IMG/VR virus record: IMGVR_UViG_3300005613_000002
Span: 186,001 to 250,000 of that record
DNA length: 64,000 nt
Reading direction: 5' to 3' (one strand)
The translations under genes were made by a program, and so were the position numbers. The notes beneath the pieces are model-generated. The model ran no database searches. It saw nothing but the letters and a program-made list of their open reading frames with translations, and was not told the origin of the DNA. This document shows positions 1 through 51,325 of the stretch, in pieces. Numbering within the stretch: position 1 is the stretch's first letter; each line of letters begins with the position of its first letter.

Positions 1-1
1 A

Positions 2-265
2 GAAACTTTTCAAATTGAATCAGATAGTGAGTCAAACGGTGAAATTGAGAGTAAAGAATTAATGAATAATATTGTTAAGGCATTTGAAGGATTAAAACCA
101 AAATATCAAAAGGTTGCAAGACTGTTATTTTTGGAACAAAAGAAATATGATGAAATTGCAGAAATTTGTGAAATGCCAATGAATAATGTTAAGGTAACAA
201 TTAACAGGTGCAGAAAAATGTTACAAGCTCAACTACAAAACCAAAAAGTTGAATATTCACTATAA
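2..265 (+). CDS. ECF-subfamily RNA polymerase sigma factor, C-terminal region 4 (5' truncated by window)
   Basis: Frame open from nt 2: ...KELMNNIVKAFEGLKPKYQKVARLLFLEQKKYDEIAEICEMPMNNVKVTINRCRKML fits the sigma70 region 4.2 HTH pattern (L+..L...R.+..L......SY.EIA..+.+...TV...+.RAR..L). Confidence 0.85.
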   Translation, partial: ETFQIESDSESNGEIESKELMNNIVKAFEGLKPKYQKVARLLFLEQKKYDEIAEICEMPMNNVKVTINRCRKMLQAQLQNQKVEYSL

Positions 266-16329: not shown

Positions 16330-18654
16330 ATGGAAATTAATTTACTAGAATTAAGTACACAAGGTGTTGAAAGTACAACCACTGCAAGAAAAATGGGAAT
16401 GTCAAAGAATGCACAATCAATGGTATTCCAATTGTTTACAAAAAATGTATATTCTAATCCAATTGGTACAGTTGTACGTGAAATTACTTCCAATTGTTTT
16501 GATAGCCATGTTGAAGCCAAAGTTAAATCTCCTGTACTTATCAAGAAAACCTATGATGAACAAACTAAAACACATTATATATCATTTATTGATTTTGGTG
16601 TTGGTATGTCAGAAGAAAGGATTTATGAGATTTATGGTGTATATTTTGAAAGTACCAAACGTGTTGATAATACACAAATTGGTGGTTTTGGAATTGGTGG
16701 TAAAACTCCATTAGCATATAAACGTTCAACAGGTCAAGGTGATGGTGAATATGATAATAGCTTTTATATTATCACTAATTATAATGGTACTCGTTATTAC
16801 TATTGCATATATGAAGGTGCTGATGCTCCTGTAATTTCCCCTTTACATTCTGAACCAACAACAGAAAGAAACGGAACTGAAATTCGTATTCCAGTTTTAG
16901 AAAAAGATATGGATGACTTTGCTAAAGAAATGGTACGTCAACTTTATTATTTTGAAGATGTTATTTTTGAAGGTTTTGAAGATGCTTGGAGGCATGGTGA
17001 AACCTTATCAAATGAGTATCAAATATTCAGAGGTAAAACATTCTTATTTAGAGGTGACGATTATTTGAGCAATGTACATATATGTTTGGGTAGAGTTGCT
17101 TACCCAATTGATTATTCTGTTTTAGGTTTATCTTCTGGTGAATATAATTTACCAGTTGCAATTAGACTTGAAGTTGGAGATTTAAATGTTACAGTTTCAA
17201 GGGAAAGTATTGATTATAGTGAGTCTACAATCAAGATGTTAAAAAAGAAATTGGTTGAGGTGAAAACTGAAATTATTGGAATGATGGTGAAACAATATGA
17301 AAATATTGTTACCCTTGAAGATTATTTCAAAATGAAAACCGATTTTGGAAACTATACTTTTAGCAATGGGAAAAGTATTTCAGTTGGAAATGTTGTTAAA
17401 GAAAAAGATATTGATTTTACAAATTTCAATTTCAGTTTCATGAAAATGCCAACAGATAAACAATTGTTTAATTTGTTCTTCAATGTTAAATCTTATGGTA
17501 AAAAACCTAATAGAAGTCGTTATGGTAGTAGTAGTAATGAATTCGAAGGTGGTTATAAAGAATTACTTTCAAGTTCAAACCTTTATCATTTTAATAACGT
17601 TTTTAATCGTAAGGTTATTAAACAATCTTATTTAAAATCAGAACACATATTGTACCATATCATTAATCGTGAAAATTTGTCACAACCACATTTGCGTCAT
17701 AAGATTACTGAATTGTTCAATGTACATTTAGATTCACTTGTTGATGAAAATGGTGTTCCTGTTCAATTTGTTCAATCATTAATGGCAATGCAGGATGAAT
17801 ATTTTACCATTGTACAAGATCAAACTGTATGTTACGATACTTTGGAAGTTCCAGAAGATTTTATTGCAGAAAGAAAGAACCGTAATAAAATCACTGATGA
17901 TATGAGGAAATTAACATTTCCAATAAAATTCATGTGTGAATATTCTGGAAGTCCTACAAGAGTAAAACTAGATCATTTATTTAAATTTAATATGCCTATC
18001 TTTTATGGTACTACTGACGATGAATTTAAATTAGAAAAAGCTAGTAAAATATATAGACATTTGTTTAATGAGAAATTTTTAATAACTGGTTATTCTGAAT
18101 ATGGTTATAACAATAGTGTTGATAAATTTAATAGAGTAGGACATGATTCAACACAAAAAGCTGGAATTATGTTTATCAGAATAGCAAAAGGAAATGTTAA
18201 ATATATGAAGTTTTGCAAAAATGCAAATCATATTGATACTGTTTATGATAAACTATTCAAACGTAAAGAAAAAGTAGTTTTGAATTATTTTAAAACTTAT
18301 CAATTATTTAATAGTTATAATAATCTGGATGATTTATATAAAGATAAACATTTTGGATTAATTGATGAAAATTGGGGTGAAACAATTATTAAACTCAATA
18401 CTGATATTACTAAAATTAAGGATTCTTTATTGGTGAAAGATTTGGAATATATTGAATCATCATTAAGTCATTATTTTAATATTGATAGAAATAAAATTGA
18501 TAAGAAATACGATAAATTAATAAAAGCTATTGATGATCTGGTAATGTTGGAAGAAGTAAATAAAGATATTGTTGAATTTATTCGTATTCCACATAGTTTA
18601 GAATATGGAAATAAAAAACTATTTCCACTATTGAAAAAAGTAATGATATTATAA
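16330..18654 (+). CDS. rIIA: RIIA-like protein with N-terminal GHKL ATPase domain
   Basis: VYSNPIGTVVREITSNCFDS, FIDFGVGMS, GGFGIGGK, SRESI; adjacent to rIIB-like gene. Confidence 0.85.
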   Translation: MEINLLELSTQGVESTTTARKMGMSKNAQSMVFQLFTKNVYSNPIGTVVREITSNCFDSHVEAKVKSPVLIKKTYDEQTKTHYISFIDFGVGMSEERIYEIYGVYFESTKRVDNTQIGGFGIGGKTPLAYKRSTGQGDGEYDNSFYIITNYNGTRYYYCIYEGADAPVISPLHSEPTTERNGTEIRIPVLEKDMDDFAKEMVRQLYYFEDVIFEGFEDAWRHGETLSNEYQIFRGKTFLFRGDDYLSNVHICLGRVAYPIDYSVLGLSSGEYNLPVAIRLEVGDLNVTVSRESIDYSESTIKMLKKKLVEVKTEIIGMMVKQYENIVTLEDYFKMKTDFGNYTFSNGKSISVGNVVKEKDIDFTNFNFSFMKMPTDKQLFNLFFNVKSYGKKPNRSRYGSSSNEFEGGYKELLSSSNLYHFNNVFNRKVIKQSYLKSEHILYHIINRENLSQPHLRHKITELFNVHLDSLVDENGVPVQFVQSLMAMQDEYFTIVQDQTVCYDTLEVPEDFIAERKNRNKITDDMRKLTFPIKFMCEYSGSPTRVKLDHLFKFNMPIFYGTTDDEFKLEKASKIYRHLFNEKFLITGYSEYGYNNSVDKFNRVGHDSTQKAGIMFIRIAKGNVKYMKFCKNANHIDTVYDKLFKRKEKVVLNYFKTYQLFNSYNNLDDLYKDKHFGLIDENWGETIIKLNTDITKIKDSLLVKDLEYIESSLSHYFNIDRNKIDKKYDKLIKAIDDLVMLEEVNKDIVEFIRIPHSLEYGNKKLFPLLKKVMIL

Positions 18655-18666
18655 TCATTACTTTTT
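18635..18666 (+). terminator. hairpin at rIIA stop fused to next -35
   Basis: AAAAAGTAATGAT/ATCATTACTTTTT perfect 13 bp. Confidence 0.6.
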
Positions 18667-18694
18667 GTAACAAAATTTTAATTAATACGTATAA
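18666..18694 (+). promoter_or_regulatory. ECF-type phage promoter
   Basis: TGTAAC-N16-CGTATAA. Confidence 0.85.
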
Positions 18695-18726
18695 TAATAA
18701 ACAAACATTAATAAACAATAATAATC

Positions 18727-19923
18727 ATGAAAAACATTCAAGGTGTAAAAATCGGAAATGTTGTAAATCTATCAATTGATGGTAGACTTTGCAAAAAGAA
18801 TTGTGGTAGTCCAGAAGAAGCAGATGAACTTTTTCGTTTGGTACTAAAAGCAAAAGAAAACCCAACGGATGAAAATGTGAAAAACATTCGTGTTTATCTG
18901 AATGAACAAACTCGTATTGCAATGCTTGCTGGATTAGAATCAGATGTAGATACTGGTGAAGTATTCTTAGCTGGCTTTAATACTCCTGTACCTGAAACTC
19001 TTTTGGAAGTTATTAAAGAGTACCATGAAAATAAGTATCCTTTAGATGCTGTTATCAATTTCTGGAAACTCTTAATGATTAATCCAGATACACGTGTTCG
19101 AACTTCATTGTTTGATTTTATTAAATCACATGACTTTGTTTTAACTGATAAAGGTTATATGGTGGTTTATAAAGCAGTTTACTTGAAAGAAGCAAAAGTA
19201 AACACACCTGAGAAAAAATATGTGGAATTCCTTTCAAACAAATATCTTCATGTGAAAAAAACATGGAAATGTTCACCTAACAAATATGTGGCATATAAAA
19301 TTCTTGAAGATAATTCATATGGAATTACCAAAACAGTAACTGCTGAAAAATGGGATGAAAAGGAAAAGAACATTGAAATCTTAGGTAAACTTGGTGACTT
19401 ACATAAAGCCATTATTGAAAATAAGGTTGAAGTTAAAGAAGACCTAGCACCATTGTACACCGATATGTATTCAAAAACTATGAGTATCCAACTTGGTGTA
19501 CCAGTTTGTCAAGAAAGAAAAGATTGTAATGGAAATCCAAAAATAGAATGTTCTGATGGTTTGCATTGTGGTGCAACAAAATATGTTGAAAACTATGCAA
19601 ATAGAAGTTCTGCAATCTTAGCTTGTTTTGTTAATCCTGCAAATGTAGTTGCTGTTCCAGATTACGATAAATCAAAAATGCGTACCTGTGAATATTTCCC
19701 TTTTGCAGTTGCAACATTCGAAAATAAAAAGATTGACATTATTGAACAATCATATTTTGAAGAAGATTATTGCAATTATGAATCTACCGAATTAGAAAAA
19801 CAAATTGCAAAGATCAAAGCAAATGAACTTCCAATTGCAACAGCAAAGAAAGCTGAAAAGGAAACCCGACCAATGGTCGAACTTATGAAAATACTTGAAA
19901 CAAGATTAGTTGATATTGTGTAA
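18727..19923 (+). CDS. rIIB: RIIB-like protein
   Basis: LINFW..LM.NP, LTDKG..V.YKAV, CSDGLHCG..KY, VNPANVVAVP.YD.SKMRTCEY. Confidence 0.85.
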   Translation: MKNIQGVKIGNVVNLSIDGRLCKKNCGSPEEADELFRLVLKAKENPTDENVKNIRVYLNEQTRIAMLAGLESDVDTGEVFLAGFNTPVPETLLEVIKEYHENKYPLDAVINFWKLLMINPDTRVRTSLFDFIKSHDFVLTDKGYMVVYKAVYLKEAKVNTPEKKYVEFLSNKYLHVKKTWKCSPNKYVAYKILEDNSYGITKTVTAEKWDEKEKNIEILGKLGDLHKAIIENKVEVKEDLAPLYTDMYSKTMSIQLGVPVCQERKDCNGNPKIECSDGLHCGATKYVENYANRSSAILACFVNPANVVAVPDYDKSKMRTCEYFPFAVATFENKKIDIIEQSYFEEDYCNYESTELEKQIAKIKANELPIATAKKAEKETRPMVELMKILETRLVDIV

Positions 19924-19933
19924 TGTTTGTGTT

Positions 19934-19965
19934 AAACCTTCCTGTATAATGTACAGGGAGGTTTT
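19934..19965 (+). terminator. intrinsic terminator
   Basis: AAACCTTCCTGTA/TACAGGGAGGTTT. Confidence 0.7.
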
Positions 19966-20013
19966 AGTTTATTAACAAACATTAAGGGTAATAATCGTTT
20001 TAATTAAAAAAAT

Positions 20014-20292
20014 ATGAGTAAAATATATTTATCAGCAGACATAAGGGAAATTAATAGTTTTAACTTTACAGTTGAAGTTGATGATAATCTACCTATAACA
20101 AAAGCAGTTGAAGTTGCTAAAGATAAATTAAAAGCACATCTGGATGTTCAATGTCCAAACCCTTTACAAAGTTCACCAGATAAGAATGGAATTCATTGTT
20201 ATGATTGTGAAGGTTCTGTTGAAACCGAAGACACCGTTTCTATTGATGTAAATAATACATTACATAAAATTCAATCGATAACAACAAAATAA
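20014..20292 (+). CDS. hypothetical protein
   Basis: Co-oriented ORF. Confidence 0.65.
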   Translation: MSKIYLSADIREINSFNFTVEVDDNLPITKAVEVAKDKLKAHLDVQCPNPLQSSPDKNGIHCYDCEGSVETEDTVSIDVNNTLHKIQSITTK

Positions 20293-20297
20293 TTATC

Positions 20298-20777
20298 ATG
20301 GATATCAATACTAAAAGAAAATATAAAAAAATTAGTAAAAATTTATATAAAGCAGCTACTAGTTGTATTGTATTATTTTTTATTGTTCTAATTGTATTAG
20401 GAACAAAAAAAATTGACGCATCAAATTTAAATGCTGCTTGGGGTATGGTAATAATTATGTCACCAATATTCATTGGGTTATTCTTTGCTTTCTTTGGTGC
20501 TATATATTATGAATATTTCAATAGCTATCATAAAAAAGTTATTGAATATCGTAAACGTTTCCATATTACCAAGATTTATGAATTTATTGATATTGGTGAT
20601 TTCGAGAAAGCTATTCCTATCTATAACAATCTTAAACAAAGTATGGATAAGGATATGTTGTACATCTATTTAATTAAATCTTCAATGGATTCAGATGACC
20701 CCAAACAAAAAGCTAAAGGTTTAGAGAATTATAATGTTATACGCAACTGGTATGATGTTGAAAAAGTTTTTAATTAA
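20298..20777 (+). CDS. two-TM membrane protein
   Basis: Two hydrophobic helices at N-terminus. Confidence 0.7.
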   Translation: MDINTKRKYKKISKNLYKAATSCIVLFFIVLIVLGTKKIDASNLNAAWGMVIIMSPIFIGLFFAFFGAIYYEYFNSYHKKVIEYRKRFHITKIYEFIDIGDFEKAIPIYNNLKQSMDKDMLYIYLIKSSMDSDDPKQKAKGLENYNVIRNWYDVEKVFN

Positions 20778-20779
20778 TA

Positions 20780-21028
20780 ATGGCTAACAGAAAATCAGGA
20801 AAAGAACTTAGAAAGGAATATCAAGACCTTCTGGATAAGACCAAGGCAATGCGTAAACGCATTATTAAAAGAGCAGAAGATTTAATTAAAAGATATCCAA
20901 ATGTTGTTGTAAATGATTTTGATCTATATAAACTAAATATACAAGCAGCAATGTCCATTATTGAAAAAATTGAAGAACATATTGCTGACAAACATCCACA
21001 TCAACAAACTAAAATGTTTAACACTTAA
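20780..21028 (+). CDS. hypothetical protein
   Basis: Co-oriented ORF. Confidence 0.7.
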   Translation: MANRKSGKELRKEYQDLLDKTKAMRKRIIKRAEDLIKRYPNVVVNDFDLYKLNIQAAMSIIEKIEEHIADKHPHQQTKMFNT

Positions 21029-21038
21029 AAAATACATA

Positions 21039-21449
21039 ATGAAAAAAGCTAAAGTATTAGAAATAAAAACTTCAGAAATAAAAACTTCAGTAAATAGAAT
21101 TACTGAAAAAGTAATTCTTTTAGAAAAAAAGAATAAAGATTTTTTCTTGAAAGTCAATTCATTATTATATAATCCAATATATAATGGCTTCCATGAACTT
21201 AGAAAAATCAATGATGATGATACTGTTGTCATTAGTGATTGTTGTAATTATCTTATTGACGCAACAACAACTATCTCCAATAATAAAGTAAAGGTTGATT
21301 ATTTAACTAAACTAAAACCAGTTTATAAACTTCATAATTTTATGGAATATTGTAATACTGTTAAGGCGTGGAGAGTTAAAAAAAGTTTAGGACATAAATC
21401 ATACTTGTTCTATAAAGATATTAATGTTATTAATATCTTCGAACATTAG
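21039..21449 (+). CDS. hypothetical protein
   Basis: Start moved from 20961 to avoid overlap. Confidence 0.65.
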   Translation: MKKAKVLEIKTSEIKTSVNRITEKVILLEKKNKDFFLKVNSLLYNPIYNGFHELRKINDDDTVVISDCCNYLIDATTTISNNKVKVDYLTKLKPVYKLHNFMEYCNTVKAWRVKKSLGHKSYLFYKDINVINIFEH

Positions 21450-21452
21450 ATA

Positions 21453-21620
21453 ATGTACAGAATATCTAAGAACATAAGAAAGTTTAGCTCAACACCCATT
21501 GTACGACCATACAAAGATGATAAGGGTAAAGAGAAAGAACAAATGGTTTGTGTATGCATTGGTAAGAAAAAAGAAGCTGATGCTTTAGCATTAAAAATTG
21601 TTGAACTATTAAATCAATAA
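21453..21620 (+). CDS. small protein, 55 aa
   Basis: MYRISKNIRK...; fills the gap. Confidence 0.55.
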   Translation: MYRISKNIRKFSSTPIVRPYKDDKGKEKEQMVCVCIGKKKEADALALKIVELLNQ

Positions 21621-21621
21621 T

Positions 21622-21864
21622 ATGACACACGAAGACTTACTTGAAATTGGTTTTAAACTATATGGTGAAACAGAAAATGACCCATACTATAAACTAATCT
21701 ATAGACCACCATTTAATTTTGGTATTACTTCTTTATCTGGTGTGTTCTTAGGATTAAATAATACCGAATTTTATCTTTATAATAACAACACTAGATATAC
21801 TGATAAAAAAGAGTTAAAAACATTAGTTAATATACTAGGAAATGAAATATATGGTATTGATTAA
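21622..21864 (+). CDS. hypothetical protein
   Basis: Co-oriented ORF. Confidence 0.65.
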   Translation: MTHEDLLEIGFKLYGETENDPYYKLIYRPPFNFGITSLSGVFLGLNNTEFYLYNNNTRYTDKKELKTLVNILGNEIYGID

Positions 21865-21895
21865 TGTTAAATCATAACAAATTAAATAAAATATC

Positions 21896-22039
21896 ATGAA
21901 CGATAAATCAAGAGACTGGTGGAACATGCAATCTTTAGATAACCAAATCTGGTTATTAATGAAACATGGGTTTGAAAACTTTAATCCTAAGAATGTGAAA
22001 CTTGAACAAATATCAAAATTATATAAATTAGAGCATTAA
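21896..22039 (+). CDS. small protein, 47 aa
   Basis: MNDKSRDWWN...; not in ORF track. Confidence 0.55.
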   Translation: MNDKSRDWWNMQSLDNQIWLLMKHGFENFNPKNVKLEQISKLYKLEH

Positions 22040-22131
22040 ACTTATAAACTGAAAGCTCAGACCCTAGTAAGAACAACTTTCAGTTTAATAGAATAATGTA
22101 CGTTTTACTTACAGATTAATAATTTTAAACT

Positions 22132-22599
22132 ATGATTAAATATATTAAAGGTGATGCAACATCACCAGTAGGAGAAGGAAATAAAGTAATAGCACATATT
22201 TCTAATGATGTTGGTGGTTGGGGTGCAGGTTTCGTATTAGCATTATCCAAGAGGTGGATACAACCTGAAGCACATTATCGTGCTGAAGCTAAAAAACTAA
22301 CCAAAGAGAACCCATACTTAACTCTGGGTGATGTACAGTTTGTACAAGTTGAAAATAATATTGTTGTTGCTAATATGATAGGACAACACCTAACTGTCTC
22401 AAGAACAAAAGAAACCCCAATTAGATATGAAGCAGTTAAAAAATGCTTAGAAGAAGTAAATGAATTCTGTATGTTAAATAACGCAACACTTCATGCACCA
22501 AGATTCGGTTCAGGTTTAGCTGGTGGTGATTGGAATAAGATTGAAGCAATCATTAATTCCACAATGTCCGTTGATGTTACTATATACGATTTTAATTAA
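22132..22599 (+). CDS. macrodomain (Appr-1-p / ADP-ribose processing) protein
   Basis: IKGDAT, IAHISNDVGGWGAGFV.A, PRFGSGLAGGDW. Confidence 0.9.
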   Translation: MIKYIKGDATSPVGEGNKVIAHISNDVGGWGAGFVLALSKRWIQPEAHYRAEAKKLTKENPYLTLGDVQFVQVENNIVVANMIGQHLTVSRTKETPIRYEAVKKCLEEVNEFCMLNNATLHAPRFGSGLAGGDWNKIEAIINSTMSVDVTIYDFN

Positions 22600-22610
22600 A
22601 AAAGGTTACA
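22582..22610 (-). promoter_or_regulatory. ECF-type promoter, antisense to macrodomain gene
   Basis: Minus strand TGTAAC-CTTTTTTAATTAAAAT-CGTATAT. Confidence 0.75.
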
Positions 22611-22633
22611 AATATTATTAACTAAAAACTTAT

Positions 22634-22918
22634 ATGAGTAGAATTGTTAATTACAAAGACGATAGATTATGTTTCGTTTCAGGATTAGATCATGTTTTAG
22701 GAAAGTTTATTCAACTATATGATAACGAAATTGAAACACCTGATGGTGAAGGAATTGTTTTAGATTGGACTGAACGTTTCGGAATATCAATTAACCTAAC
22801 TGGAGAATCAATAAGTAATAATGAACATGAAGTTCTAATGATGATTAGTAAATATCTCTCAAAACATAACAAAGAATTAATCATTATTACTGCCGAACAA
22901 CAAAACAATCTAAATTAA
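22634..22918 (+). CDS. hypothetical protein
   Basis: Co-oriented ORF. Confidence 0.7.
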   Translation: MSRIVNYKDDRLCFVSGLDHVLGKFIQLYDNEIETPDGEGIVLDWTERFGISINLTGESISNNEHEVLMMISKYLSKHNKELIIITAEQQNNLN

Positions 22919-22999
22919 TCATAAGCCGAATGTAATTCATATTGATATTTTTATTACATTTACATTACGATAAAATAATTCCAATAATTAGAGAGATAT

Positions 23000-23464
23000 A
23001 TGACTAGAAGAAAAAAAGAATACTCCCCTGAAGAAAACACAACATTTAATACTACCAATAATTATAACATAGAACTAGAGTTTAACCTTATCAATCATGA
23101 TAAAGAATTATCAGATGCTGAAGATGCTATCGAAACATTAAAGCTGAAGGTCATTGAAATTATTATTAATGAAACCTTAGACGATAATGTACATGAAGAA
23201 TTCTATGAGGAAATAATGAGAGTGCTCGACTATACAGGTAGACTATCAATGCAAATATTCGCAATTAATGACTTGCTTGAAGAACAATACCTGAAGAAAT
23301 ATAAAAACGCTCCTGCAATGGCTAAAGAATTATGGCTTAACCATTATGAACAATTACACCAACCATATAACAAAATTAAAAATAGATGCTTTAAACTCTT
23401 AGATCGTTTAGATAATGGTTATGTCGCATTGTACGATAAGAACCCTCCTAACTGGAATCCATAA
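23000..23464 (+). CDS. helical hypothetical protein
   Basis: Last + strand gene. Confidence 0.75.
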   Translation: MTRRKKEYSPEENTTFNTTNNYNIELEFNLINHDKELSDAEDAIETLKLKVIEIIINETLDDNVHEEFYEEIMRVLDYTGRLSMQIFAINDLLEEQYLKKYKNAPAMAKELWLNHYEQLHQPYNKIKNRCFKLLDRLDNGYVALYDKNPPNWNP

Positions 23465-23518
23465 TGTACAATCTAAAAAATAATTGTAGTTCATCACATT
23501 AATGCTACAGTGTTCTCG

Positions 23519-23556
23519 AATGTCCAGTTTATTTAATTATTTACTGGACATTTTTT
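23519..23556 (+). terminator. terminator closing + block
   Basis: AATGTCCAGT/ACTGGACATT plus U-tract. Confidence 0.7.
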
Positions 23557-23561
23557 ATTCA

Positions 23562-23619
23562 CCATTGTACACAAACTCTACAACACCCATTGTACACCTA
23601 ATATATTTTACCATTGTAC
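23562..23619 (+). repeat. three CCATTGTAC direct repeats, 24-25 bp period
   Basis: Copies at 23562, 23587, 23611. Confidence 0.8.
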
Positions 23620-23969
23620 GAAGATACATTCCCAGAGGGTGTTAACCTTTATCTAAAATAAATAAAGTAACCCCTAAGTTTATAGTTATTTATAAAATAT
23701 TATAAAATTAAGTTTCTATAAAAAATATCTATAAGGAAAGTTTGGCGTGTGGGGACTACATTTTCTTGATTTTACCATAAAAACCATTATTTTTCTTCCA
23801 TTTCATGACACAATCTTCCATTTTAAACCTTCAATTTACTGAAAGATGTATTGTACACCGTCTAACTACCTGATAATCAGTAGTACCATTATATTATAAA
23901 ATAGTACAAAATATTACAGTTTTTTAGGGTTATGGTACAGTTAAAGTTAGGTTATGTTTATATTAAATT

Positions 23970-24104
23970 TTAGATATATTCCTCACCACATTTATATATC
24001 TTAGTTTTAAGTCCTAATTCATTATAGACATCATGTTTAAATAATCTACCATTAAAGTTACAATTATTACATTTAGGATGTAAGAACCTCCAAAAATTCA
24101 TCAT
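23970..24104 (-). CDS. small Cys-containing protein, 44 aa
   Basis: MMNFWRFLHPKCNNC...KCGEEYI; starts 2 nt after upstream stop. Confidence 0.5.
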   Translation of the reverse strand: MMNFWRFLHPKCNNCNFNGRLFKHDVYNELGLKTKIYKCGEEYI

Positions 24105-24106
24105 AA

Positions 24107-24436
24107 TCACAATGAATTTAATTTTACTTTTCCTTTAACAACATTTATTTTATCTTTATTCTTTTCACCAATTTTGATATCTAAATCATATTCTCTGGAA
24201 AGCAGCATATTGTTTGCATCTTCTTTAGTTATTATTTTTAAGAATTCATTAGTCATACCAGAGTGTTCATGAATATCTTTATAAATTTTATCACCTATTA
24301 GATACTCAAGATCATATTTAAGTTCTTTATTGTCACCTCTGTCTGCTTTTCTGACATTTCTTATTATACCTAATCCATATGCACCTCTTTCAATATGGTG
24401 TACTAGTTGACCATCTTTAATGTATTTTCTATTCAT
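24107..24436 (-). CDS. hypothetical protein
   Basis: Co-oriented ORF in - block. Confidence 0.7.
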   Translation of the reverse strand: MNRKYIKDGQLVHHIERGAYGLGIIRNVRKADRGDNKELKYDLEYLIGDKIYKDIHEHSGMTNEFLKIITKEDANNMLLSREYDLDIKIGEKNKDKINVVKGKVKLNSL

Positions 24437-24484
24437 GATTATTAATTAAAATTATATTTATTTATATACCTATAACTACAAAAA

Positions 24485-24841
24485 TTATGAGTTATAGAAG
24501 TTAACTATTTTAGAATACATATCTTTAATAGTAGTCCATTTAACTGGAACTTTTTGCATATAGTATTCATTGTTATCGTCATTATTGCAAGTATTACATT
24601 CGCCACAATCACAATATTCATTGTTTGCTATTTCGATTGTTTCATTTATTTCTCCACAGAGCAGGTTTTTAGCTCCATTTTCGACAGTTAAGCTAGTGGG
24701 TAATAGATTTAGGTCTTTAACAACATTTATTGCGTCATTAATAGCTTTTACATAACCTTCTCTAAATTTAGAGTCTTCGTTATGTTCGTTAACTTCTCTA
24801 TCTATTTTTAATTGTTTAAATTTCTTTTCTGCTATATTCAT
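24485..24841 (-). CDS. hypothetical protein with CxCxxCxxC
   Basis: Co-oriented ORF. Confidence 0.7.
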   Translation of the reverse strand: MNIAEKKFKQLKIDREVNEHNEDSKFREGYVKAINDAINVVKDLNLLPTSLTVENGAKNLLCGEINETIEIANNEYCDCGECNTCNNDDNNEYYMQKVPVKWTTIKDMYSKIVNFYNS

Positions 24842-24858
24842 ATTTTTAATTAAGAATA

Positions 24859-25224
24859 TTAACGAGTAATGAATCTATCTGGGATTACAAAATAGTTATT
24901 GATTGGACTTCCAAATATTTTTCTACAATCATCAATTATTGTTTTATCGAATTTCATTTTTACAATTCTTCCAGTTGGGAGTTTATATTTACGTTTAGTT
25001 AGAATACAGACGGATAAATCATTTCCAATTGCATCGACTAAAAATGGTTGATTATATTCGATAACTTGGTTTAGAGTTATTTTGCTTTTATCTTCATCTG
25101 TTTTATAGAAAAAATCGATATCGTTTCTTGTATGAGCTTTTATAAGACCACCGTTATTTATTGTTTCATAGGTTAGGGTTTTGATGAATCTTTTTAATCC
25201 TTCATAATCTATAATGTAGTTCAT
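24859..25224 (-). CDS. hypothetical protein
   Basis: Co-oriented ORF. Confidence 0.7.
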   Translation of the reverse strand: MNYIIDYEGLKRFIKTLTYETINNGGLIKAHTRNDIDFFYKTDEDKSKITLNQVIEYNQPFLVDAIGNDLSVCILTKRKYKLPTGRIVKMKFDKTIIDDCRKIFGSPINNYFVIPDRFITR

Positions 25225-25245
25225 ATTAGATAGTTTTTATTGGAA

Positions 25246-25431
25246 TTATAATGTATCATAAGTTCCCAGATACTTATCGTTTATATGGACTTCTGCCTCT
25301 TTTTTATTTTCTTTAAAATAAATTGTTACTTTATCTTTATCTGTACCAACTAATTTTTGTATTGCTTCCAAAATATCTTCCCAGTATTCCATATAGTTTT
25401 TATTTATATAATTGAATATAATATCCATCAA
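25246..25431 (-). CDS. hypothetical protein
   Basis: Co-oriented ORF. Confidence 0.6.
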   Translation of the reverse strand: MMDIIFNYINKNYMEYWEDILEAIQKLVGTDKDKVTIYFKENKKEAEVHINDKYLGTYDTL

Positions 25432-25519
25432 TACCTTTAACTACTTTACCGATTACCAACCAATCTCCAGTAGGTGCTTGTTCATAAACATATCTTCCTA
25501 TTTGTACCATAGTTTTTAA

Positions 25520-25810
25520 TTAATAGTCAGCACTAATATGATATTTTTTATTTTTATATTCAATTTTTTCTACACGTCTTTCTATTTCATTTATTTCACC
25601 AACTGCATCGGTATTAAAATATATTGAAAAACTTCCTAGAAGGTTTAATTCATGGCAACGAACTAAATAGTTTAGAGTTTCTATTTGTAGTTCAGATAAT
25701 TCTTTTTCATCTAATTTAATAATATAACCAAAACCTTTATCTGGATTTTTAAATACATCTAAAAAGACATTTTGATTTACATTAAAATATATTCCTTTAA
25801 ATATTTGCAT
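25520..25810 (-). CDS. hypothetical protein
   Basis: Co-oriented ORF. Confidence 0.65.
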   Translation of the reverse strand: MQIFKGIYFNVNQNVFLDVFKNPDKGFGYIIKLDEKELSELQIETLNYLVRCHELNLLGSFSIYFNTDAVGEINEIERRVEKIEYKNKKYHISADY

Positions 25811-25844
25811 AGTTTTTAATTAAAAGTTTAAGCACAAAATATTT

Positions 25845-26252
25845 TTACAAATTATCAAATTCAGGAATCCATCTATTTGGCATTCTTTTAAATTCCATGA
25901 TTGCTTTACTATTTTCATGTGAATATAAGCACCATTTACTCCATTTCTTTTTATTTGTTTTTCTACTTGGTTGCCAAATAGAATAATCATCATCATTATA
26001 AAACTTCCAAATATCTCTATGATTGGTTTTTATTTCATAACTTTCTGTATGTCTTAATGAAAGGTTTACGAAATATTTATAACCTTTTTCTTTTAGTGAT
26101 TCTAAATATTTTTCAACTTCTCTAAGATAACCTTTCACTAAGAAATTACCTTTATTGGAGTATACATAAGCTAGGGTATATGCACCACCATACCAACCTT
26201 TTTTACCATCAGGTTTGATTTCGATTACATTTTTCCAAGTTTTATTTTTCAT
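25845..26252 (-). CDS. hypothetical protein (Trp/Tyr/Lys rich)
   Basis: Co-oriented ORF. Confidence 0.7.
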   Translation of the reverse strand: MKNKTWKNVIEIKPDGKKGWYGGAYTLAYVYSNKGNFLVKGYLREVEKYLESLKEKGYKYFVNLSLRHTESYEIKTNHRDIWKFYNDDDYSIWQPSRKTNKKKWSKWCLYSHENSKAIMEFKRMPNRWIPEFDNL

Positions 26253-26362: not shown

Positions 26363-26391
26363 TTATACGTAAAACATTAATAAATGTTACA
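26363..26391 (-). promoter_or_regulatory. ECF-type phage promoter
   Basis: TGTAAC-N16-CGTATAA. Confidence 0.85.
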
Positions 26392-30867: not shown

Positions 30868-30896
30868 TTATACGTGAATATGTTTTAAATGTTACA
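30868..30896 (-). promoter_or_regulatory. ECF-type phage promoter
   Basis: TGTAAC-N16-CGTATAA. Confidence 0.85.
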
Positions 30897-37187: not shown

Positions 37188-37216
37188 TTATACGTAATTA
37201 TCATTATTTTGTTACA
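37188..37216 (-). promoter_or_regulatory. ECF-type phage promoter
   Basis: TGTAAC-N16-CGTATAA. Confidence 0.85.
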
Positions 37217-38621: not shown

Positions 38622-38650
38622 TTATACGAAATTAAAGATAAAATGTTACA
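38622..38650 (-). promoter_or_regulatory. ECF-type phage promoter
   Basis: TGTAAC-N16-CGTATAA. Confidence 0.85.
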
Positions 38651-46116: not shown

Positions 46117-46145
46117 TTATACGAATACTAATAAAAAATGTTACA
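46117..46145 (-). promoter_or_regulatory. ECF-type phage promoter
   Basis: TGTAAC-N16-CGTATAA. Confidence 0.85.
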
Positions 46146-51296: not shown

Positions 51297-51325
51297 TTAT
51301 ACGTAATGATGAATATTTTGTTACA
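51297..51325 (-). promoter_or_regulatory. ECF-type phage promoter
   Basis: TGTAAC-N16-CGTATAA. Confidence 0.85.

What the first reader, a model, noticed from the sequence alone, without database searches (positions are those of the whole stretch)
22046..22610. Lone antisense promoter aimed into the macrodomain gene
Seen: of 44 promoters, only 22582-22610 opposes local gene direction. It is full consensus with the commonest spacer, overlaps the macrodomain stop codon, and fires back through the gene towards a 10-bp hairpin (AAACTGAAAG/CTTTCAGTTT, 22046-22086) that could bound the RNA. Known: macrodomains remove ADP-ribose (DarG-like) and can counter ADP-ribosylating defences. Inference: timed antisense silencing of an ADP-ribose eraser; otherwise an inversion relic.
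Basis: partly seen in the sequence, partly recalled or inferred. Interest (0 to 1): 0.6.

Follow-up and report, generated by a model that had tools for sequence, protein, structure and literature searches.

The report
Lone backward promoter copy behind macrodomain gene
A jumbo phage has one perfect copy of its own sigma-factor promoter pointing backwards into a macrodomain gene, but the copy is young, found in this genome only, built half from the gene's last codons, and untested for any regulatory role.

Summary
The window is part of a 321.6-kb phage genome with terminal repeats. That genome carries 58 copies of a strict bipartite motif, TGTAAC-N16-CGTATA (one copy has N17). Chance predicts about 0.01 per window. 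Every copy points with its genes except the one at 22610..22583 (- strand), which overlaps the stop codon of a + strand macrodomain gene (22132-22599).

The motif resembles the B. subtilis SigW type of ECF sigma promoter. The phage encodes two ECF sigma factors, and one of them sits at the head of the promoter array.

The -10 element and most of the spacer of the backward copy are the reverse complement of the conserved C-terminal codons I-Y-D-F-N-stop. Only the -35 lies in intergenic DNA.

No other relative examined has the full site, including the sister lineage; the only other copy is a 100% identical contig of the same phage. One relative has the coding half only. Gene order and strand around the site are conserved, so it is not an inversion relic.

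The site probably can fire, giving a non-coding antisense RNA. Sense and antisense transcription would use the same sigma class, so "timed" silencing has no support. No sequencing runs were listed. Interest is modest.

The parts
22583..22610 (-). Backward copy of the phage's ECF-type promoter. TGTAAC is at 22610-22605, the 16-nt spacer at 22604-22589, and CGTATA at 22588-22583. The -35 lies in the 34-nt intergenic gap. The spacer holds the stop codon. The -10 is the reverse complement of the Ile-Tyr-Asp codons.
22575..22575 (-). Predicted antisense start site (inferred). At nine or more genes of this phage the ATG lies 8 nt after CGTATA, which suggests leaderless starts at that distance. Here that base is an A followed by TC, so no ORF starts there.
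   Evidence: inference
22132..22599 (+). Macrodomain gene (155 aa) of the BT1257/SCO6735 type. Its C-terminus VDVT(I/V)YD(F/L)x is conserved across the clade.
22150..22166 (-). Terminator-like hairpin on the - strand: 7 bp with 4 G-C pairs, a loop of 3, and a U-rich tail (-9 kcal/mol, z -3.2). It lies inside codons 7-12 of the macro gene and is a candidate 3' end for an RNA of about 430 nt. Such matches occur near chance rate.
22046..22086 (.). It is unique in the genome and has no U-tract. Its role is unknown.
22634..22918 (+). 94-aa gene directly downstream. It has homologues downstream of the macro gene on the same strand in L014, L001, L079 and L082.
23000..23464 (+). 154-aa gene. It is conserved downstream of the macro gene on the same strand in about 20 relatives.
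18666..18693 (+). Nearest sense-strand promoter of the same class, in front of rIIB and 3.4 kb upstream of the macro gene.
19934..19964 (+). Strong terminator-like hairpin after rIIB (-18.7 kcal/mol, z -5.6). Sense transcripts must read through it to reach the macro gene.
23519..23552 (+). Hairpin followed by a T-run that ends the + strand gene block. The - strand block starts near 24100.
1..265 (+). 3' part of the phage ECF sigma factor gene (genome 185,699-186,265). It sits at the head of the promoter array.

Best explanation
The site is a young, lineage-specific, reverse-oriented copy of the phage's own ECF-sigma promoter, and more likely a tolerated by-product than an evolved switch.

Shown:
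- The 12 invariant bases, the exact N16 spacing and the extended -35 (TGTAACCTTTT) are all present.
- The -10 and 11 of the 16 spacer bases are the reverse complement of the conserved last codons of the macrodomain gene (ATA TAC GAT TTT AAT TAA).
- The single spacer mismatch to the commonest cassette is the middle base of the conserved Asp codon.
- The -35 lies in a 34-nt intergenic gap that only this genome has.

Inferred:
- A pre-existing half-site was made by the codons. It is also seen in relative L001.
- The half-site was completed by a short copy from one of the TGTAACC-type promoter copies (gene conversion or recombination), or by mutation.
- The family behaves as all-or-none at its 12 core bases, so RNA polymerase carrying the phage ECF sigma probably starts near 22575. 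It would then make a non-coding RNA antisense to the macro gene.
- That RNA would end at the hairpin and U-rich tail at 22166-22150 (about 430 nt) or at the 22086-22046 hairpin (about 530 nt).
- Sense transcription appears to come from the same promoter class. The effect would then be steady dampening, by head-on collision or RNA pairing, of the macro gene and the two genes behind it. It would not be a timed switch.
For: - Motif statistics and all-or-none behaviour.
- Orientation is with the genes at 57 of 58 copies in this genome and at all 53 copies in two relatives.
- The site scores within the family range.
- ECF sigma genes are present, and the B. subtilis SigW motif is TGAAACTTT / CGTATA.
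- The sigma gene sits directly upstream of the promoter array in both G000 and G001.
- The conserved C-terminus and its codons are shown.
- TAC makes up only 8.6% of Tyr codons here and ATA 30% of Ile codons.
- Homology to the cassettes stops at the promoter edges, spanning 28-30 nt.
- The site is absent from the sister lineage L014 and from all other relatives. Only L001 has the half-site.
- Flanking genes are collinear in relatives.
- No other promoter class lies upstream of the macro gene.
Against: - There are no expression data. No sequencing run was listed, so firing is only predicted.
- The stretch between the -10 and the predicted start is G/C-richer than in real copies. It has T where 84% have A, and the site is in the lowest sixth by score.
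- A perfect match by chance alone is expected about 0.05 times per genome, which is small but not zero.
- A rare Tyr codon supplies the essential CG. A - strand hairpin specific to this genome lies at the far end of the gene. Both would also fit selection for an antisense unit.
- Gene conversion is inferred from identity to one cassette subtype. No donor tract or flank homology was found.
Confidence: 0.5

Rival explanations
1. The site is a silent look-alike. It has a perfect core but is not used in vivo, for example because the region downstream of the -10 is unsuitable or because sense transcription occludes it.
For: - The site scores low within the family, with atypical bases after CGTATA.
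- It has no downstream gene.
- It is not conserved.
- Half of it is forced by protein coding.
Against: - All 12 invariant bases, the exact spacing and the extended -35 are present.
- Eight accepted copies score lower.
- Eight accepted copies also have T after CGTATA.
- Sigma factors of the ECF type are known, from general knowledge, to depend mainly on the -35 and -10 cores.
Confidence: 0.25
2. This is the reader's reading: an evolved, timed antisense RNA that shuts off the macrodomain (an ADP-ribose eraser) at a set stage of infection.
For: - It is the only opposed copy of 58.
- A rare TAC codon provides the essential CG.
- A - strand terminator-like hairpin specific to this genome sits at the other end of the ORF.
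- Phage lambda's OOP RNA, known from general knowledge, shows the principle.
Against: - The site is absent from every other relative examined, including the sister lineage.
- The same sigma class would serve both sense and antisense, so nothing in the sequence sets a time.
- The TAC codon is also present in L001 and five other relatives that lack a -35.
- Terminator-like hairpins occur near chance rate.
Confidence: 0.12
3. The site is an inversion relic. The promoter once drove - strand genes, and the adjoining segment was later flipped.
For: The site lies 1.5 kb from the point where the + and - gene blocks converge.
Against: - The order rIIA, rIIB, small genes, macro, 94-aa gene, 154-aa gene is kept in relatives, all on one strand.
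- The -10 half is native coding sequence of the macro C-terminus.
- Homology to the promoter cassettes ends at the promoter edges.
Confidence: 0.02
4. The site is a pure chance match with no templated origin.
For: - Half of the site follows from conserved residues and AT-rich codon choice.
- The expected number of perfect matches per genome is about 0.05.
Against: - The intergenic part matches the rarer TGTAACC-TTTT subtype over 11 of 11 bases.
- Overall the site is identical to five cassettes at 27 of 28 positions.
Confidence: 0.06

Closest known systems
Bacillus subtilis SigW / SigX-type ECF sigma promoters
   Same: - They are bipartite, with a -35 ending in AAC, a fixed 16-nt gap and a CGTATA -10. 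SigW is given as TGAAACTTT / CGTATA.
- The phage sigma's best named NCBIfam matches include SigW, BldN and SigM models.
- Recognition is very strict, as here, where 57 copies are perfect and almost none are near-perfect.
   Different: - The -35 is TGTAAC rather than TGAAAC.
- The sigma factor is phage-encoded and scores far below every equivalog cut-off (about 100 bits against 206-243).
- That this sigma reads these promoters is inferred from co-occurrence and gene position, not tested.
Phage lambda OOP RNA (promoter pO behind cII, firing back into its 3' end). Recalled from general knowledge, not tested here.
   Same: A promoter placed at the 3' end of a gene and pointing into it would give a cis-antisense RNA able to lower that gene's expression.
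   Different: - OOP is short (77 nt), has a defined terminator and is conserved among lambdoid phages.
- Here the predicted RNA is 430-530 nt, its end is uncertain, the site is not conserved, and no transcript has been seen.
Promoter-early stem-loop (PeSL) cassettes of T4-type phages. Recalled from general knowledge.
   Same: - Many near-identical promoter cassettes separate small early genes.
- The gene content next to them varies between relatives: extra ORFs follow the macro gene in L001 and L014.
- This fits recombination at the cassettes.
   Different: - These are ECF-type promoters, not sigma-70 early promoters.
- No stem-loop partner was found.
- The copy here is inverted and half coding-derived.
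BT1257 / SCO6735-type macrodomains (PDB 2fg1, 2afc, 5e3b) and the T4-type 'phosphatase / macro domain protein' next to the vs gene
   Same: - The protein aligns over its full length, with E 1e-47 to 1e-41 against the solved proteins.
- It is about 30% identical to the T4-type phage proteins.
   Different: - It is not DarG, and no partner toxin or ADP-ribosyltransferase was looked for.
- Its substrate is unknown.

Membership tests
This phage's TGTAAC-N16-CGTATA promoter family | All 12 core bases are present | tested here: met
   12/12
This phage's TGTAAC-N16-CGTATA promoter family | Exactly 16 nt between the two hexamers, and an A/T-rich spacer | tested here: met
   N16 spacing; 15 of 16 spacer bases match the commonest spacer
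This phage's TGTAAC-N16-CGTATA promoter family | A after CGTATA and an A/T-rich stretch up to the start site | tested here: not met
   T, which 14% of members have; rare G and C bases follow, because the stretch is coding sequence
This phage's TGTAAC-N16-CGTATA promoter family | Same strand as local genes, 8-30 nt (sometimes more) before an ATG | tested here: not met
   Opposed to local genes; the next - strand ORF start is 7.7 kb away
ECF sigma-dependent promoters (SigW-like) | An -35 with an AAC core, a CGT-containing -10, a fixed spacer, and a cognate ECF sigma in the genome | tested here: met
   Motif; two ECF sigma genes. Actual recognition was not tested.
Cis-antisense regulatory RNA (OOP-like) | A transcript is detected | not testable with these tools
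   No sequencing run was listed
Cis-antisense regulatory RNA (OOP-like) | A defined terminator | tested here: inconclusive
   Two candidate hairpins; hairpins of this kind occur near chance rate
Cis-antisense regulatory RNA (OOP-like) | Conserved in related phages | tested here: not met
   Absent from the 27 relatives' macro 3' ends examined (L013, the same phage, excepted); half-site in L001 only
DarG antitoxin macrodomain | Passes the DarG family model | tested here: not met
   17.5 bits against a cut-off of 250
Macrodomain, BT1257/SCO6735 type | Full-length sequence similarity to solved members | tested here: met
   E 9e-47 (2fg1), 9e-47 (2afc), 2e-41 (5e3b); phrog_335 at 9e-30
Inversion relic | Flanking gene order or strand differs from that of relatives | tested here: not met
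   The region is collinear and on the same strand in relatives

The most novel reading that the evidence does not exclude
A jumbo phage uses its own ECF sigma factor to drive a cis-antisense RNA from a promoter written into the last codons of a macrodomain gene. This would tune how much ADP-ribose-removing activity is made during infection. It would be a recently evolved, lineage-specific layer of control over a likely counter-defence enzyme.
Probability: 0.12. Interest if true: 0.55.

Novelty: new member of a known kind. Interest (0 to 1): 0.3.

Why it matters
If the site fires, it would be a clean natural example of a new antisense promoter arising where coding sequence already supplies half of a very strict sigma-factor motif. 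It would also be easy to test, because the -35 is intergenic and can be changed without touching the protein.

On its own the site is a single-genome feature with no sign of being conserved. The wider setting may matter more. A clade of uncultivated jumbo phages appears to run a large block of small genes from about 58 SigW-like promoters under a phage-encoded ECF sigma, and many of those genes appear to have leaderless mRNAs.

Tried and rejected
- **Other genetic codes.** The 40-kb - strand block has no long ORFs, but reading TGA or TAG as sense adds nothing on that strand and only one or two 200-aa ORFs on the other. Reading TAA as sense opens frames on both strands alike, as expected when TAA ends 396 of 468 genes, and nothing else in the genome suggests recoding. 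The genes are simply small.
- **Near-identical phage records.** None was found.
- **Pfam on the macro gene and its neighbours.** No hit at E 0.01. PHROGs and PDB sequence searches then settled the macrodomain.
- **Sigma-70 consensus scan.** Matches fall below shuffle expectation, and the scan does not pick up the site.
- **The 94-aa neighbour in viral contigs.** No relatives by that route. Homologues were later found by tblastn in the fetched loci.
- **Sequencing runs.** None was listed for 18000-26000, so read laying was not used and there is no expression evidence either way.
- **Rfam on 21500-24200.** Only sub-threshold noise.
- **Multisubunit or T7-type phage RNA polymerase.** No hit to the Rpb2_6 model. 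The T7-type model also gave nothing, but it hit none of the control genomes either, so that result is uninformative.
- **Flank homology that would reveal a donor for gene conversion.** None beyond the 28-30 nt of the promoter itself.
- **Literature.** Searches for this motif in phages and for ECF sigma factors in jumbo phages found nothing relevant.
- **L015, L021 and L042.** Their parent records are not held, so their promoter orientation could not be tallied.

Full report
**What the window is**

The window is bases 186,001-250,000 of a single 321,624-bp virus record. The record has 27.5% G+C and direct terminal repeats. It carries rIIA (16330-18654) and rIIB (18727-19923), so it is a jumbo phage. 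No near-identical record is in the phage collection.

Genes run on the + strand up to about 23.5 kb and on the - strand from about 24.1 kb. The - strand block has no ORF over 250 aa. Stop-codon recoding does not explain this; the genes are small.

**The promoter family**

A strict bipartite motif, TGTAAC-N16-CGTATA, occurs 43 times in the window, against 0.01 expected.

Genome-wide counts are as follows:

| Mismatches to the 12 core bases | Sites found | Expected by chance |
|---|---|---|
| 0 (N16 spacing) | 57, plus one N17 copy | 0 in ten simulated genomes |
| 1 | 2 | 1.3 |
| 2 | 25 | 27 |

The family is therefore all-or-none at its 12 core bases.

Of the 58 copies, 57 point the same way as the local genes. 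They usually end 8-30 nt before an ATG. At nine or more genes the ATG lies exactly 8 nt after CGTATA, which suggests leaderless mRNAs.

The motif is not the sigma-70 consensus. Sigma-70-like matches are fewer than in shuffles. It has the form of ECF sigma promoters: B. subtilis SigW is given as TGAAACTTT / CGTATA.

The phage encodes two ECF-type sigma factors of 188 aa each. One ends at window base 265, directly ahead of the first promoter of the array. In relative G001 the orthologous sigma gene (45% identity) also sits directly ahead of that phage's promoter array. I infer, but have not shown, that this sigma reads these promoters. No Rpb2-type subunit of a phage multisubunit RNA polymerase was found, and the T7-type model gave nothing but was uninformative, because it hit none of the control genomes.

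**The backward copy**

On the - strand, 22610-22605 is TGTAAC, 22604-22589 is the spacer, and 22588-22583 is CGTATA.

- It is the only one of 58 copies opposed to its surroundings.
- No credible - strand ORF follows it.
- It matches the five copies of the commonest cassette at 27 of 28 positions, and homology stops at the promoter edges.
- In a leave-one-out weight matrix it scores 24.8 bits, the 9th lowest of 57 (range 10.4-44.9).
- Its weak points all lie after the -10, where it runs into coding sequence.

**The gene it overlaps**

ORF 22132-22599 is a macrodomain. PDB matches are 2fg1 and 2afc at E 9e-47 and the Streptomyces macrodomain 5e3b at 2e-41. It also hits phrog_335 at 9e-30.

It is about 30% identical to the "phosphatase / macro domain protein" next to the vs gene in T4-type phages. 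It is not DarG: 17.5 bits against a cut-off of 250.

**How the site is built**

The protein's C-terminus, VDVT(I/V)YD(F/L)x-stop, is conserved in more than 25 relatives and in the solved structure.

- The - strand CGTATA is the reverse complement of the codons (A/G)TA-TAC-G for (Ile/Val)-Tyr-Asp.
- The next 11 spacer bases are the reverse complement of the rest of the Asp codon, Phe, Asn and the stop.
- Only 5 spacer bases and the -35 are intergenic.
- The single spacer difference from the commonest cassette is the middle base of the conserved Asp codon. The T after CGTATA is the first base of the Ile codon. The site is thus as close to a canonical cassette as the protein allows.
- The essential CG depends on the Tyr codon TAC, which makes up only 8.6% of Tyr codons in this genome. 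ATA makes up 30% of Ile codons. However, TAC is also used at this position in L001 and five other relatives that have no -35.

**Relatives**

IMG/VR and metagenome searches gave 92 loci. About a dozen of them use the same promoter motif.

- L013 is 100% identical over 8,465 nt, so it is the same phage.
- None of the other relatives has a - strand copy at the macro 3' end.
- The sister lineage L014 (69% identity, support 96/94) ends in HIYDLP-stop and shows no trace of the site.
- L001 (62-64% identity) shares the coding-derived half, with the same last 17 nt and three following A's. At the -35 position it has CCATAA instead.
- In the two relatives whose records could be scanned, all 31 and all 22 perfect copies are co-oriented with their genes. 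The one apparent exception drives a tRNA cluster.

The full backward promoter is therefore specific to this genome and arose after the split from L014.

**Not an inversion**

The order rIIA, rIIB, a few small genes, then macro is kept in L001 and L002. The 94-aa and 154-aa genes downstream have homologues downstream of the macro gene, on the same strand, in many relatives.

The position just after the macro stop codon is variable. L001 and L014 each have an extra ORF there, and the intergenic gap ranges from a slight overlap or a few nt (7 nt in L001) to hundreds.

**Origin (inferred)**

The conserved codons plus AT-rich codon choice produced a half-site. The -35, together with the C and four T's typical of the TGTAACC-type cassettes, was then added. 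The most economical route is a short templated copy from such a cassette.

I found no donor flank, so point mutation cannot be excluded. A perfect match by chance alone is expected about 0.05 times per genome. The extra 5-base agreement makes pure chance less likely still.

**Likely action (inferred)**

Every other perfect match in three genomes sits in front of a gene, and near-matches are at chance level. The core therefore seems sufficient for recognition, and the site probably fires when the sigma factor is present.

- The start would be near 22575, and no start codon is there.
- The RNA would run antisense through the macro ORF.
- Two candidate ends exist. One is a - strand hairpin with a U-rich tail at 22166-22150 (-9 kcal/mol, z -3.2), inside codons 7-12; the palindrome is absent from L001 and L002.
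- Neither end is secure. Terminator-like matches and 10-bp inverted repeats occur at or modestly above chance rate, and Rfam finds nothing.

**Why "timed" is unsupported**

No + strand promoter of this class lies between 18666 and the macro gene. Nor does any copy of the second motif I found, GTATTTAT(A), which lies upstream of 55 genes, mostly in the 0-185 kb and 260-321 kb parts of the genome and none in the window.

In relatives the macro gene lies 0.5-1.8 kb behind a TGTAAC promoter. Sense transcripts therefore most likely come from the same class, reading through the hairpin after rIIB. Sense and antisense would then be made together. The expected result is steady dampening of macro and of the 94-aa and 154-aa genes, through head-on collisions or RNA pairing, not a temporal switch.

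**Limits**

No sequencing run was listed, so nothing here shows whether the RNA exists. The host is unknown. Literature searches found no description of this promoter set.

**Verdict**

The site is real and non-random, but it is confined to one genome. It is best read as a recent and probably active, but probably unselected, antisense promoter. The inversion idea is rejected. Adaptive timed silencing remains possible at low probability.

Noticed in passing
window 1-265 (genome 185,699-186,265) and genome about 294.2-294.7 kb; promoters across genome 129-276 kb: The phage encodes two ECF-type sigma factors. One sits directly ahead of an array of about 58 SigW-like promoters (TGTAAC-N16-CGTATA), and relative G001 has the same layout. 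The same motif is used by a clade of uncultivated phages with 27-42% G+C.
   Followed up: partly
for example window 37189-37216, 38623-38650, 46118-46145 and 51298-51325 (- strand): At nine or more promoters the ATG lies exactly 8 nt after CGTATA, which implies leaderless mRNAs. The other promoters have leaders of about 20-30 nt with no visible Shine-Dalgarno sequence.
   Followed up: partly
for example window 26387-26391, 30892-30896 and 46141-46145 (- strand): Several genes end with their TAA stop inside the TGTAAC -35 element of the next promoter. Gene ends and promoters are packed into each other.
   Followed up: no
mostly genome 0-185 kb and 260-321 kb (outside the window): A second upstream motif, GTATTTAT(A), precedes 55 genes, mostly in the structural-gene regions and none in the window. 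It is probably a second (late?) promoter class. L014 has one right after its macro gene.
   Followed up: partly
window 24100-64000, - strand: Forty kb contain no ORF of 250 aa or more. The block is a dense run of small genes, each often with its own promoter. Stop-codon reassignment does not explain it.
   Followed up: partly
window 23560-23625 and 23848-23858: Three or four copies of CCATTGTAC lie in the non-coding zone where the + and - gene blocks converge, just after a hairpin with a T-run at 23519-23552. Their role is unknown.
   Followed up: no
L093 1060-1190 (genome about 185,310-185,440): Direct repeats (TTGGTTAACATGT... and TATCTTTAATTAGTTAT...) lie in the 480-nt gap ahead of the sigma gene. 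A promoter-like variant (TTGTTACA, then the common spacer, then TTTAATAT) lies nearer the gene. These are possible control sites for sigma expression.
   Followed up: no
L095 2638-2665 (G001): In relative G001 the only promoter on the other strand drives a tRNA cluster, so this promoter class also serves tRNA genes.
   Followed up: partly
just after the macro stop codon in L001 (6455-6739) and L014 (438-1006): Unrelated extra ORFs are inserted between the macro gene and the 94-aa gene in different relatives. This junction is a hotspot for gene gain and loss.
   Followed up: partly
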